The position numbers were made by a program, and so were the translations under genes. DNA of 64,000 bases from Octopus sinensis (Eukaryota): NCBI RefSeq assembly GCF_006345805.1, contig NC_043024.1, positions 7,564,001-7,628,000 on the forward strand. The letters run 5' to 3'. The notes under the pieces were generated by a model that was given only the letters and a program-made list of their open reading frames with translations, was not told the DNA's origin and did no database searches. Shown here one piece after another: positions 19,706 through 32,456 of this stretch (positions are counted from its first letter, which is position 1; each line of letters starts with the position of its first letter).

Positions 19706-20128
19706 TGCTCTGTGTTTCTTTCAATTACTTTAAATATAACAAAGAATTTAGTAAAATAATTTATTTCTCATTAGTGTTAGGAACATAAATTGTGACTAAG
19801 GTTTGGTGGAAGATTTTGATTCAAAACTTATGAAAACAAAACATTTGTACTCAGAGCTAGAGCCGGTTTCAGCCGAGTTGGTAATGAGGAATGGAGGTGG
19901 TTCTAAGGATGGAGTACAACAGAGGGGAGAGAGCATGGCTGGAGGAAGATAATGAGGAATATTCAACTTAATCCATTTGTCCCCTCTGTGTGAAATAAGA
20001 CAGACAGACAGACAAATAGACAGGCAGGCAGATAGATAAAGGAAAAGTTTACGAAAATAAACAAAAGACCAAGGCAGGTGGAGTACAAACAAACAAATGT
20101 ATTAGTATAGCGCTCAGGAATAGAAAAA

Positions 20129-20168
20129 GTCTTTTACGTTTCGAGCCTATGCTCTTCGACAGAAAGAT
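20129..20168 (-). ncRNA. Minimal type I hammerhead-like motif (Penelope-type remnant), variant core
   Basis: Minus strand: TCTTT-CTGTCGA-A-GAGC ATAG GCTC-GAAA-C-GTA-AAAGA. Stem I TCTTT/AAAGA, stem II GAGC/GCTC, ACGT palindromic stem III; core position A6 is U. Confidence 0.5.
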
Positions 20169-29700: not shown

Positions 29701-32456
29701 GATAATGAGGAATGGAGGTGGTTCTAATGATGGAGTATAACAGAGGGGAGAGAGCATGGCTGGAGGAAGATAAAAAGGAATGGAGGTGGTTCTAATGATG
29801 GAGGATAACAGAGGGGAGAGAGCATGGCTGGAGGAAGATAATGAGGAATGGAGGTGGTTCTAAGGATGGAGTACAACAGAGGGGAGAGAGCATGGCTGGA
29901 AGAAGATAAAAAGGAATGAAGGTGGTTCTAATGATGGAGGATGGAGTATAACAGAGGGGAGAGAGCATGGCTGGAAGAAGATAAAAAGGAATGGAGGTGG
30001 TTCTAATGATGGAGGATGGAGTATAACAGAGGGGAGAGAGCATGGCTGGAAGAAGATAAAAAGGAATGGAGGTGGTTCTAATGATGGAGGATGGAGTATA
30101 ACAGAGGGGAGAGAGCATGGCTGGAGGAAGATAATAAGGAATGGAGGTGGTTCTAATGATGGAGGATGGAGTATAACAGAGGGAAGAGAGCATGGCTGGA
30201 GGAAGATAGAAAGGAATGGAGGTGGTTCTAATGATGGAGGATGGAGTATAACAGAGGGGAGAGAGCATGGCTGGAAGAAGATAAAAAGGAATGGAGGTGG
30301 TTCTAATGATGGAGGATGGAGTATAACAGAGGGGAGAGAGCATGGCTGGAAGAAGATAAAAAGGAATGGAGGTGGTTCTAATGATGGAGGATGGAGTATA
30401 ACAGAGGGGAGAGAGCATGGCTGGAGGAAGATAAAAAGGAATGGAGGTGGTTCTAATGATGGAGGATGGAGTATAAGAGAGGGGAGAGAGCATGGCTGGA
30501 AGAAGATAAAAAGGAATGGAGGTGGTTCTAATGATGGAGGATGGAGTATAACAGAGGGGAGAGAGCATGGCTGGAAGAAGATAATAAGGAATGGAGGTGG
30601 TTCTAATGATGGAGGATGGAGTATAACAGAGGGGAGAGAGCATGACTGGAGGAAGATAATGAGGAATGGAGGTGGTTCTAAGGATGGAGTATAACAGAGG
30701 GGAGAGAGCATGGCTGGAGGAAGATAATGAGGAATGGAGGTGCTTCTAAGGATGGAGTATAACAGAGAGGAGAGCGCATGGATGGAAGAAGATAATGAGG
30801 AATGGAGGTGGTTCTAAGGATAGGGTATAACAGAGGGAAGAGAGCATGGCTGGAGGAAGATAATGAGGAATGGAGGTGGTTCTAAGGATGGAGTATAACA
30901 GAGGGGAGAGAGCATGGCTGGAAGAAGATAATGAGGAATGGAGGTGGTTCTAAGGATGGAGTATAACAGAGGGGAGAGAGCATGGCTGGAAGAAGATAAT
31001 GAGGAATGGAGGTGGTTCTAAGGATGGAGTATAACAGAGGGAAGAGAGCATGGCTGGAGGAAGATAATAAGGAATGGAGGTGGTTCTAATGATGGAGGAT
31101 GGAGTATAACAGAGGGGAGAGAGCATGGCTGGAGGAAGATAATAAGGAATGGGAGTGGTTCTAAGGATGGAGTATAACAGAGGGGAGAGAGCATGGCTGG
31201 AAGAAGATAATGAGGAATGGAGGTGGTTCTAAGGATGGAGTATAACAGAGGGAAGAGAGCATGGCTGGAGGAAGATAATAAGGAATGGAGGTGGTTCTAA
31301 TGATGGAGGATGGAGTATAACAGAGGGGAGAGAGCATGACTGGAGGAAGATAATGAGGTGGTTCTAAGCATGGAGTATAACAGAGGGAAGAGAGCATGGC
31401 TGGAGGAAGATAATAAGGAATGGAGGTGGTTCTAATGATGGAGGATGGAGTATAACAGAGGGGAGAGAGCATGGCTTGAAGAAGATAATGAGGAATGGAG
31501 GTGGTTCTAAGGATGGAGTATAACAGAGGGAAGAGAGCATGGCTGGAGGAAGATAATGAGGAATGGAGGTGGTTCTAAGGATGGAGTATAACAGAGGGCA
31601 GAGAGCATGGCTGGAGGAAGATAAAGAATGGAGGTGGTTCTAATGATGGAGGATGAAGTATAACAGAGGGGAGAGAGCATGGCTGGAGGAAGATAATGAG
31701 GAATGGAGGTGGTTCTAAGGATGGAGTATCACAGAGGGGAGAGAGCATGGCTGGAGGAAGATAAAAAGGAATGGAGTTGGTTCTAAGAATGGAGTATAAC
31801 AGAGGGGAGAGAGCATGGCTGGAGGAAGATAATGAGGAATGGAGGTGGTTCTAAGGATGGAGTACAACAGAGGGGAGAGAGCATGGCTGGAGGAAGATAA
31901 TGAGGAATGGAGGTGGTTCTAAGGATGGAGTATAACAGAGGGCAGAGAGCATGGCTGGAGGAAGATAAGGAATGGAGGTGGTTCTAATGATGGAGGATGA
32001 AGTATAACAGAGGGGAGAGAGCATGACTGGAGGAAGATAATGAGGAATGGAGGTGGTTCTAAGGATGGAGTATAACAGAGGGGAGAGAGCATGGCTGGAG
32101 GAAGATAATGAGGAATGGAGGTGGTTCTAAGGATGGAGTATAACAGAGGGGAGAGAGCATGGCTGGAGGAAGATAATGAGGAAAGGAGGTGGTTCTAAGG
32201 ATGGAGTATAACAGAGGGGAGAGAGCATGGCTGGAAGAAGAGAATGAGGAATGGAGGTGGTTCTAAGCATGGAGTATAACAGAGGGAAGAGAGCATGGCT
32301 GGAAGAAGATAATGAGGAATGGGAGTGGTTCTAAGGATGGAGTATAACAGAGGGAAGAGAGCATGGCTGGAGGAAGATAATGAGGAATGGAGGTGGTTCT
32401 AAGGATGGAGTATAACAGAGGGAAGAGAGCATGGCTGAAGGAAGATAATGAGGAAT
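20740..32456. repeat. 68/75-bp GA-rich satellite, ~160 copies
   Basis: Unit TAATGAGGAATGGAGGTGGTTCTAA(TGATGGA)GGATGGAGTATAACAGAGGGGAGAGAGCATGGCTGGAGGAAGA. The long unit gives the 25-aa repeats seen in the ORF track. Confidence 0.99.

What the first reader, a model, noticed from the sequence alone, without database searches (positions are those of the whole stretch)
19882..32456. Before-and-after snapshot of satellite birth: one 68-bp seed vs an 11.7-kb array in paralogous introns
Seen: duplicate copy 1 has one 68-bp monomer bounded by an 11-bp direct repeat TAATGAGGAAT (19882-19960), followed by ATTC.ACTTAATCC. In copy 2 the same left flank (…CCGGGTTGG) and right flank (ATTCGACTTAATCC, 32457) enclose ~160 copies in 68-bp and derived 75-bp forms. 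Flanks are ~98-99% identical, so the size change is recent. Inference: microhomology-seeded runaway expansion inside an intron, inflating an 858-bp module to ~13 kb; collapse in copy 1 is the alternative.
Basis: partly seen in the sequence, partly recalled or inferred. Interest (0 to 1): 0.75.

Follow-up and report, generated by a model that had tools for sequence, protein, structure and literature searches.

The report
One-unit versus 163-unit repeat paralogues
In a repeat-choked, apparently non-coding stretch of an octopus genome, two side-by-side copies of an 858-bp segment differ because a 68-bp motif is present once in one copy and 163 times (11.7 kb) in the other. This is a real and tidy example of how tandem-repeat arrays start and grow, but the window alone cannot show which copy changed, and the process itself is already known.

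Summary
Copy 1 (19785-20642) holds one 68-bp unit plus an 11-bp direct repeat (19882-19960). Copy 2 (20643-33930) holds 163 units plus the same 11 bp (20740-32456), with identical outer boundaries.

New anatomy:
- The left flank is the right half of a piggyBac-like MITE. A full copy with TTAA and inverted ends exists in Octopus vulgaris, without the 68-bp unit.
- The right flank is a 5'-truncated SINE tail.
- So the unit is the MITE terminus plus a 57-bp spacer, and the array was founded at a junction between transposable-element (TE) fragments.

The "n + 0.16 units" architecture fits the known Haber-Louis / Taylor-Breden model of minisatellite birth.

- No exon was found, so "introns" is untested.
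- The flanks are not uniformly 98-99% identical: 5/292 differences outside a 132-nt patch with 22.
- All six flank differences whose direction could be inferred are derived in copy 1, so copy 1 is not a pristine "before" state.
- The dominant 75-bp unit lineage is too diverged from the solo unit for a purely recent, post-duplication origin (p about 0.01).

I lean (about 0.5) to most growth occurring in copy 2 after the duplication. Collapse of a pre-existing array in copy 1 stays at about 0.3. Orthologous loci could not be fetched.

The parts
19325..19502 (+). Third, diverged R-like element ending in (TG)n, upstream of copy 1. Used as the outgroup for the R patch.
   Evidence: nhmmer E = 5.7e-5. 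Three-way alignment.
19535..19716 (+). SINE-B copy (dispersed family, at least 6 other copies in the window) abutting the truncated 5' side of the MITE.
   Evidence: blastn hits at 89-93% to 36196-36378, 40348-40518, 49183-49354, 49822-49987 and 62626-62787.
19705..19887 (+). Piggybac-like MITE, positions 34-222 of a 235-bp element. Its last matched bases (TAATGA against TAACGA) are the first 6 nt of the left 11-bp direct repeat.
   Evidence: nhmmer E = 3.4e-38 against the full MITE in O. vulgaris L009 4327-4561, which has TTAA plus 12-nt inverted ends.
19785..20642 (+). Copy 1 of the 858-bp tandemly duplicated unit.
   Evidence: Direct-repeat spacing of 858 bp (D3). Alignments.
19882..19960 (+). 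Solo unit: 68 bp plus the second copy of the 11-bp direct repeat TAATGAGGAAT (1.16 units).
   Evidence: (D4).
19961..19999 (+). Copy-1 remnant of the SINE-A 3' tail, carrying two CpG-to-CpA changes and 14-nt and 22-nt deletions relative to SINE copies and to copy 2. It is followed by (AGAC)n to 20040.
   Evidence: Alignment A1..
20041..20348 (+). Copy-1-specific 308 bp: about 175 bp of unassigned sequence plus an AGAC-like microsatellite. It occupies the site where copy 2 has the 174-bp array.
   Evidence: No match elsewhere.
20349..20642 (+). R element of copy 1 plus the (TG)n(TA)n microsatellite that forms the duplication junction. It contains the divergent patch 20441-20572.
20643..33930 (+). 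Copy 2 of the duplicated unit, 13.3 kb.
20643..20739 (+). Left flank of copy 2. It corresponds to MITE positions 118 to about 216 only, preceded by the microsatellite. The duplication breakpoint therefore lies inside the MITE.
   Evidence: nhmmer E = 1.6e-21..
20740..32456 (+). Array of 163 units plus the terminal 11-mer. 65 units are of the 68-bp class and 98 of the 75-bp class. 68-bp units lie at both edges. The interior shows block structure (runs of 75-bp units closed by two or three 68-bp units). The + strand is 76.5% purine.
32457..32531 (+). Intact 3' tail (about 75 nt) of a 5'-truncated SINE-A, followed by (AGAC)n to 32566.
   Evidence: 86-88% identity to 17028-17101 and 17214-17287. 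Alignment A1.
32567..33592 (+). Second copy-2-specific array: 174 bp x 5.9. Its unit occurs once at 18319-18505, inside the 3' end of a LINE-like element.
33596..33645 (+). 22-bp motif x 2.3 in copy 2. Copy 1 has one unit, at 20349-20370.
33623..33930 (+). R element of copy 2 plus (TG)n(TA)n. The divergent patch is at 33715-33846.

Best explanation
What it is. The locus lies in a TE- and satellite-dense, apparently non-coding part of an Octopus genome. An 858-bp segment was duplicated in tandem. In order, the segment holds:
- the right half of a piggyBac-like MITE;
- a 57-bp spacer;
- a 5'-truncated SINE tail;
- (AGAC)n;
- an R element;
- (TG)n(TA)n.

A 68-bp unit is formed by the MITE terminus plus the spacer and is bracketed by the 11-bp direct repeat TAATGAGGAAT. 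It is present as 1.16 units in copy 1 and 163.16 units in copy 2, with identical boundaries.

How it arose.
- The 'n + 0.16' architecture shows that the array was founded by misalignment between the two 11-bp repeats. The structure is shown; slippage or unequal exchange is inferred.
- The array then grew by unequal sister-chromatid exchange or replication slippage, adding single units and blocks of about 4-17 units.
- A 7-bp internal duplication (AGGATGG) followed by a G-to-T change produced the 75-bp form that now fills the interior.

My reading of the history (inferred).
- Most of the 11.7 kb was gained in copy 2 after the duplication.
- It was not a very recent burst.
- Copy 1 is not an untouched ancestor. 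It is the more derived copy in its flanks and may itself have lost a few units from a short proto-array that already held both 68- and 75-type units, as the left edge of copy 2 still does.
For: - Identical boundaries, and the solo unit is identical to the first unit of the array.
- The 11-mer is unique to these sites in the window.
- 163 units were segmented. 68-type units lie at both edges: units 1-2 (20746-20881) and units 158-163 (32044-32451). Three units carry the unmutated 7-bp duplication.
- The solo-type C variant occurs only in 68-type units: units 1, 21, 38, 104, 122, 127 and 155.
- Repeated multi-unit blocks are present.
- The duplication junction lies inside the MITE and in a microsatellite.
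- Copy 2 also has two other local tandem expansions, 174 bp x 5.9 and 22 bp x 2.3.
- Elsewhere in this window and in O. vulgaris, a 61-64-bp repeat in a LINE tail ranges from about 2 to about 28 copies between paralogous copies, so locus-specific growth is common in this genome.
- Neither strand can form a hairpin (z = +0.4 to +1.3), which points to homology-driven misalignment rather than hairpin slippage.
- Collapse from more than 100 units to exactly one is a rare outcome of any single register-random exchange (my reasoning).
Against: - The path from the solo unit to the 75-type consensus has 4-5 substitutions plus an indel, against about 0.6 expected from flank divergence of 5/292 (p = 0.013 to 0.003).
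- The mean unit-to-solo distance is 3.7 substitutions, against 1.2 expected. At least the 68/75 split therefore probably predates the event that made the flanks about 98% identical.
- All six flank differences whose direction could be inferred are derived in copy 1 (one-sided p = 0.016). They include two deletions right next to the solo unit, which suits a deletion-prone copy 1.
- A 132-nt patch is 16.7% diverged, with changes on both lineages. It shows either an old duplication with later gene conversion or an ectopic conversion. Either way, flank identity is an unreliable clock.
- No outgroup locus could be obtained.
Confidence: 0.5

Rival explanations
1. Collapse. A large, already diversified 68/75-bp array existed before the 858-bp duplication. 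Copy 1 lost all but one unit, in one of two ways:
- later, by in-register recombination or single-strand annealing between the first and last units;
- at birth, if the duplication was made by an error-prone replicative process that switched template across the array.
For: - Array diversity exceeds flank divergence.
- Flank changes whose direction could be inferred are 6:0 derived in copy 1, including 14- and 22-nt deletions immediately 3' of the solo unit, one of them between GTTTG repeats.
- The solo unit equals the edge unit, as a collapse that keeps the left boundary predicts.
- One unit is an absorbing state for contraction.
Against: - The solo unit carries the states of array unit 1 at all three sites where unit 1 and unit 163 differ. 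The crossover would therefore have to lie in the last roughly 19-33 nt.
- Reaching exactly one unit from more than 100 is about 1% per register-random event.
- Copy 2 also shows derived insertions (the 174-bp array), so the asymmetry is not total.
- Copy 1 has 308 bp that copy 2 lacks, which simple collapse does not explain.
Confidence: 0.3
2. Old duplication with gene conversion. This is a rival on timing and is compatible with expansion. The two copies are about 17% diverged, as in the 132-nt patch, and the near-identity elsewhere is due to repeated short conversion tracts. On this reading the array has been growing for tens of millions of years while the one-unit paralogue persisted.
For: - The patch has 22/132 differences, with derived states on both lineages: 10 in R1 and 5 in R2.
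- Per-lineage divergence of the patch (about 8%) matches the root-to-tip divergence of 75-type units (about 6-7%).
- Several large indels separate the copies.
Against: - It needs at least three or four separate conversion tracts that all spare a 132-nt patch flanked by 92 and 32 identical nt.
- One ectopic conversion from another R-like copy is simpler. A third R-like copy lies at 19325-19502, though it is not itself the donor.
- It does not explain the 6:0 polarity.
Confidence: 0.2
3. Assembly artefact. Either a short and a long allele of one heterozygous locus were laid down in tandem, or the array length or arrangement is mis-assembled.
For: - The window comes from a gapped assembly, with 100 N at 1085-1184.
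- Two stretches of the array, units 14-30 (21702-22942) and units 54-65 (24632-25517), are rich in 1-nt indels typical of noisy long-read consensus.
- The differences between the copies resemble allelic indels.
Against: - There is no gap near the locus.
- Copy 2's left flank starts in the middle of the MITE, directly after copy 1's microsatellite, without the upstream MITE half or the SINE-B that an allele would carry. A real junction sequence therefore exists in the assembly.
Confidence: 0.07
4. TE-borne repeat. The 68-bp unit is an internal repeat of a mobile element, like pearl-type MITEs or LINE-tail repeats, so unit number simply varies among element copies and nothing was born at this locus.
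For: - The array is bracketed by MITE and SINE sequence.
- Other arrays in the window are TE-derived.
Against: - The complete MITE copy in O. vulgaris ends in its inverted repeat plus TTAA and is followed by unrelated DNA, with no 68-bp unit.
- A unit profile finds nothing significant in the rest of the window or in L009 (best E = 0.13).
- The two copies share a duplication junction rather than separate insertion sites.
Confidence: 0.04

Closest known systems
Minisatellite birth by slippage or unequal exchange between short flanking direct repeats (Haber & Louis 1998; Taylor & Breden 2000), as summarised in PMC3389668
   Same: - A unit of tens of bp is flanked by a short direct repeat: 5-10 bp in the model, 11 bp here.
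- The array equals n units plus one extra copy of that repeat, i.e. an incomplete terminal unit.
- An unexpanded homologous sequence shows the proto-state.
   Different: - The scale differs: 163 units and 11.7 kb, which is satellite-sized.
- The comparison is with a tandem paralogue, not an orthologue or a phylogeny, so polarity is not established.
- One of the direct repeats is the decayed end of a MITE.
TE-derived tandem repeats (Ahmed & Liang 2012, PMC3389668) and the satellite-TE junction networks described in molluscs (Satovic et al. 2016, PMC5139131)
   Same: - The array shows abrupt transitions at both ends into TE fragments.
- The genome shows frequent local amplification of TE-associated segments.
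- Other arrays in this window (174 bp, 63 bp, 237 bp) really are TE-derived.
   Different: Only the first 6 nt (perhaps up to 13 nt) of the 68-bp unit come from a TE. The remaining 57 nt have no TE match in the sequence available.
Pearl / DTC84-type modular MITEs of bivalves, with core repeats plus a microsatellite between inverted-repeat flanks (PMC3879986)
   Same: The order is similar: MITE-type flank, then core repeats, then a microsatellite segment.
   Different: - The repeats lie outside the MITE's terminal inverted repeat.
- The full MITE copy elsewhere lacks them.
- Pearl arrays have up to about 5-6 repeats, not 163.
Repeat-length divergence between segmental-duplication paralogues (general knowledge)
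   Same: Two young tandem paralogues differ mainly in tandem-repeat copy number.
   Different: The contrast is extreme (1 against 163). The minimal state coincides exactly with the inferred founding state.

Membership tests
Direct-repeat-founded minisatellite/satellite (Haber-Louis / Taylor-Breden) | Head-to-tail array of a unit of 10 bp or more | tested here: met
   163 units, TRF score 17272.
Direct-repeat-founded minisatellite/satellite (Haber-Louis / Taylor-Breden) | The array equals n whole units plus one extra copy of a short direct repeat (incomplete terminal unit) | tested here: met
   The array starts and ends with TAATGAGGAAT, and its 11,717 bp equal 163 segmented units plus the terminal 11-mer.
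Direct-repeat-founded minisatellite/satellite (Haber-Louis / Taylor-Breden) | A homologous unexpanded sequence has one unit bracketed by the direct repeat | tested here: met
   Copy 1, 19882-19960, is 79/79 identical to the first unit of copy 2. It is a paralogue, not an orthologue.
Direct-repeat-founded minisatellite/satellite (Haber-Louis / Taylor-Breden) | An outgroup or phylogeny shows that the one-unit state is ancestral | not testable with these tools
   No eukaryotic DNA collection is on hand. Protein-based look-ups of the satellite and of window ORFs found nothing. The metagenome scan gave only chance 19-mers.
TE-borne internal tandem repeat (pearl-type MITE, LINE/SINE-tail repeat) | The unit is part of the element's own sequence in other copies | tested here: not met
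   The full MITE in O. vulgaris L009 4327-4561 lacks the unit. The unit profile has no significant hit to SINE or LINE sequence in the window or in L009.
TE-borne internal tandem repeat (pearl-type MITE, LINE/SINE-tail repeat) | The array is enclosed by the element's terminal repeats and target-site duplication | tested here: not met
   The array begins at the MITE's right terminus and ends at a 5'-truncated SINE tail.
Classical satellite DNA | Long homogeneous array with higher-order structure | tested here: met
   The array is 11.7 kb. Mean pairwise distance is 4.6 events per unit. Recurrent multi-unit blocks are present.
Classical satellite DNA | High copy number at many loci or in heterochromatin | tested here: inconclusive
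   No other copy was found in the 64-kb window or in 20.9 kb of O. vulgaris. Genome-wide abundance is not testable here.
Tandem segmental duplication | Two adjacent collinear copies sharing a novel junction | tested here: met
   Order and orientation match (L, unit(s), SINE tail, (AGAC)n, R, microsatellite). The junction joins (TA)n to MITE position 118.
   No non-TE coding signal in the ORFs of 90 aa or more. The only Pfam hit among ten scanned ORFs was the LINE endonuclease.

The most novel reading that the evidence does not exclude
Copy 1 really is the unchanged founding state: one 68-bp proto-unit between two 11-bp repeats at a junction of MITE, spacer and SINE tail. Its tandem twin grew from that state to 163 units within the roughly 2-3 My implied by the 1.7% flank divergence. 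That would be a within-genome before-and-after pair for de novo satellite birth, with a datable start.
Probability: 0.2. Interest if true: 0.55.

Novelty: new member of a known kind. Interest (0 to 1): 0.3.

Why it matters
How satellite-sized arrays of long units start is rarely observed, because founding states are usually erased. Here the founding architecture can be read from the array itself, as n units plus one 11-bp repeat. A paralogue shows exactly that minimal state, and the founding site can be assigned to a junction between two transposable-element fragments. If outgroups showed the one-unit state to be ancestral, the locus would give a dated natural example of the Haber-Louis / Taylor-Breden model scaled up to 12 kb, and a growth rate. 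As it stands, it is a clean but unsurprising case of repeat-number divergence between paralogues, in a genome whose neighbourhood shows the same behaviour at several other loci.

Tried and rejected
1. Coding array. The 75-bp period gives ORFs up to 312 aa, but neither strand's translation has any homologue. Rejected as a by-product of an in-frame period.
2. Hairpin- or G4-driven slippage. DNA folds are weaker than shuffles on both strands and there is no canonical G4 motif. Rejected.
3. Common origin with the purine-rich 123-bp satellite at 1185-2937. The alignment z-score is about 2, with 18-28 of 500 shuffles as good, and nhmmer E-values are 0.2-2. Not demonstrated.
4. The unit derives from the SINE or LINE families in the window. 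No hits were found.
5. The patch in copy 1 was converted from the upstream R-like copy at 19325-19502. Rejected, because copy 2 matches that copy at more patch sites than copy 1 does (10 against 5).
6. Finding the locus or satellite elsewhere. Two protein searches, 20 exact ORF look-ups, one metagenome scan (8 chance 19-mer hits) and a literature sequence search all came back empty.
7. Large recent internal duplications of the array. Only blocks of 4-11 units were found at low divergence. A self-BLAST listed nothing of 350 bp or more off the diagonal.
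Full report
**Observation.**
- The window is eukaryotic and extremely repeat-rich.
- At 19882-19960 there is TAATGAGGAAT + 57 nt + TAATGAGGAAT, followed by ATTCAACTTAATCC.
- The 176 nt at 19785-19960 recur 858 bp downstream, at 20643-20818, with 174/176 identity. The 79-nt stretch is 79/79 identical to the first unit there (families D3 and D4).
- From 20740 a tandem array runs to 32456 and is followed by ATTCGACTTAATCC.
- Anchored segmentation gives 163 units plus the terminal 11-mer. 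65 units lack and 98 carry a 7-nt block, which gives the 68- and 75-bp forms. TRF scores the array at 17272.
- The 11-mer occurs only in the array and at the two solo sites, and never on the minus strand.

**Extent of the duplication.**
- Both copies continue to the right through a SINE-like tail, an (AGAC)n tract and an R element, and both end in (TG)n(TA)n. Copy 1 is 19785-20642 and copy 2 is 20643-33930.
- Copy 2 is inflated by more than the 68/75-bp array. It also holds a 174-bp x 5.9 array (32567-33592) and a 22-bp x 2.3 repeat.
- Copy 1 instead has 308 bp of its own at the same site.
- The 174-bp unit occurs once at 18319-18505, inside the 3' end of a LINE-like element.

**What the flanks are.**
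- The right flank (32457-32531) is the last ~75 nt of a SINE that has full copies at 16919-17290 and elsewhere in the window. In copy 1 this tail carries 14-nt and 22-nt deletions and two CpG-to-CpA changes relative to copy 2 and to four SINE copies.
- The left flank proved to be a mobile element too.
  - A LINE ORF in the window identified the organism as an Octopus: 93% identity to an O. vulgaris protein and 71-72% to O. bimaculoides.
  - The 20.9 kb of O. vulgaris chromosome OX597814.1 fetched through that protein (L009) happens to contain a 235-bp element at 4327-4561. It has TTAA on both sides and 12-nt terminal inverted repeats, CCCTTTCGTTAC ... GTAACGAAAGGG.
  - Window 19705-19887 aligns to positions 34-222 of this element (E = 3.4e-38). 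Copy 2's left flank, 20642-20745, aligns only to positions 118-222.
- Three things follow:
  - the duplication breakpoint lies inside this piggyBac-like MITE;
  - MITE homology runs into the first 6 nt of the left 11-bp repeat (TAATGA against TAACGA);
  - in O. vulgaris the MITE is followed by TTAA and unrelated DNA, so the 68-bp unit is not part of the element.
- The unit is therefore the MITE terminus plus a 57-bp spacer, and the array sits between a MITE end and a 5'-truncated SINE tail.

**The array.**
- 68-type units occupy both edges: units 1-2 at the left (20746-20881) and units 158-163 at the right (32044-32451). 75-type units dominate the interior.
- The 75-bp form equals the 68-bp form plus a tandem copy of AGGATGG with one G-to-T change. 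Three units still carry the unmutated duplication.
- The solo unit's C variant (TACAAC) is found in only 7 units, all of the 68-bp class. Unit 1 (20746-20813) and unit 155 (31836-31903) are identical to the solo unit.
- Recurrent blocks, in which a run of 75-type units is closed by two or three 68-type units, and 4-11-unit near-duplicates show growth by multi-unit exchange.
- Mean pairwise distance is 4.6 events per unit. There are 41 singleton and 55 shared substitution variants.
- The + strand is 76.5% purine. Neither strand folds better than shuffled sequence, and there is no canonical G4 motif.
- The long ORFs are a by-product of the 75-bp period and have no homologues.

**Mechanism.** An array of n units plus one extra 11-mer is what the Haber-Louis and Taylor-Breden models predict for founding by misalignment between non-contiguous short direct repeats (PMC3389668). 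This holds whichever copy changed later. The pre-array sequence must have looked like today's copy 1. Later growth by unequal exchange or slippage is inferred from the block structure.

**Polarity and timing.** Three lines of evidence bear on this.
- *The flank clock is unreliable.*
  - Outside a 132-nt patch the alignable flanks differ at 5/292 sites (1.7%, 95% CI 0.6-4.0%). Inside the patch (20441-20572) they differ at 22/132 (16.7%; Fisher p = 3e-8).
  - With a third, diverged R-like copy (19325-19502) as outgroup, both lineages changed in the patch: 10 changes in copy 1 and 5 in copy 2.
  - The patch is therefore either old divergence or an import from another copy.
- *The array looks older than the 1.7%.*
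  - The path from the solo type to the 75-type consensus has 4-5 substitutions, where about 0.6 are expected (p = 0.013 to 0.003).
  - Units differ from the solo unit by 3.7 substitutions on average, against 1.2 expected.
- *Copy 1 is the more derived copy.* Every flank difference whose direction could be inferred is derived in copy 1: two in L (MITE outgroup), two CpG transitions and two deletions in the SINE tail. That is 6:0, one-sided p = 0.016.

Taken together:
- Strict 'recent runaway expansion from an untouched seed' is disfavoured.
- Collapse from more than 100 units to exactly one is also a rare outcome.
- The left edge of copy 2 still reads solo-type 68, then 68, then 75. A short mixed proto-array before the duplication, a small loss in copy 1 and large growth in copy 2 would fit all the data.
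- My estimates are about 0.5 that most growth happened in copy 2 after the duplication, about 0.3 for collapse of a large pre-existing array, and about 0.07 for an assembly artefact.
- Using the O. vulgaris TE calibration in PMC13282606 (JC distance 0.065 is about 18 My), rough ages are 2.4 My for the flanks, 26 My for the patch and about 1 My for singletons. These ages are inference only.

**Introns.** ORFs of 90 aa or more outside the arrays showed no non-TE coding signal. Among ten that were scanned, the only Pfam hit was the LINE endonuclease, and 20 ORFs are absent from the protein collection. Whether the locus is intronic cannot be told from the window.

**Context and verdict.**
- Paralogue-specific expansion is commonplace here. 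A 61-64-bp repeat from a LINE tail has about 2 to about 28 copies at five sites in the window, and 2.3-2.7 copies in O. vulgaris.
- The 12.7-kb 41-bp array also ends directly in a SINE tail.
- No orthologous or second-individual sequence could be obtained with the tools available.
- The finding is a real, well-delimited instance of a known process, with a nicely readable founding site. Its headline claim, a before-and-after snapshot of recent birth in introns, is only partly supported.

Noticed in passing
window 3242-16043: A 12.7-kb array of a 41-bp unit (about 310 units) ends directly in the last ~43 nt of the same SINE 3' tail (16001-16043). This is the same configuration as the right edge of the 68-bp array, so two large arrays in one window both abut truncated SINE tails.
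   Followed up: partly
window 32567-33592 and 18319-18505: There is a second 'one versus many' pair. A 174-bp unit is present once inside the 3' end of a LINE-like element and 5.9 times in copy 2 of the duplication, at the site where copy 1 has 308 bp of unrelated sequence.
   Followed up: partly
window 20441-20572 vs 33715-33846: A 132-nt patch is 16.7% diverged, inside duplicates that are otherwise about 98% identical. Derived changes lie on both copies relative to a third R-like copy at 19325-19502. Gene conversion of some kind is implied, but the donor is unknown.
   Followed up: partly
window 37431-39241, 41140-41569, 48502-48644, 56136-57519; L009 11451-11664: A 61-64-bp tandem repeat belonging to the 3' tail of a LINE varies from about 2 to about 28 copies among element copies in the window. 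It has 2.3-2.7 copies in the O. vulgaris locus.
   Followed up: partly
window 1085-1184: A 100-N assembly gap lies immediately before a 123-bp purine-rich satellite (1185-2937). That satellite shares a GCAT.GCTGG.A.GAAGATAAT-like motif with the 68-bp unit, but the similarity is not significant.
   Followed up: yes
window 63007-63784: A tRNA-like sequence (Rfam tRNA 29.7 bits; odd four-base anticodon loop in ARAGORN) sits inside a 237-bp x 3.2 tandem repeat. It is probably a tandemly amplified tRNA-derived SINE head.
   Followed up: no
window 52844-56074 (+) and 43508-45608 (-): A degraded LINE carries an AP-endonuclease domain and reverse-transcriptase-like ORFs broken by frameshifts. A diverged partial copy lies in reverse orientation. 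The LINE is 87% identical at DNA level to a copy on O. vulgaris chromosome OX597814.1.
   Followed up: partly
L009 4327-4561: In O. vulgaris the complete piggyBac-like MITE (TTAA, inverted ends CCCTTTCGTTAC) lies inside the annotated range of a nuclear-receptor gene (zf-C4 + Hormone_recep), about 100 nt upstream of what looks like its last coding exon.
   Followed up: no
window 57915-58769 and 59864-61653: Two further arrays are present: a 23-bp unit x 37, and a 38-bp unit organised in a 150-bp higher-order repeat x 11. They flank an inverted SINE dimer at 59194-59532.
   Followed up: no
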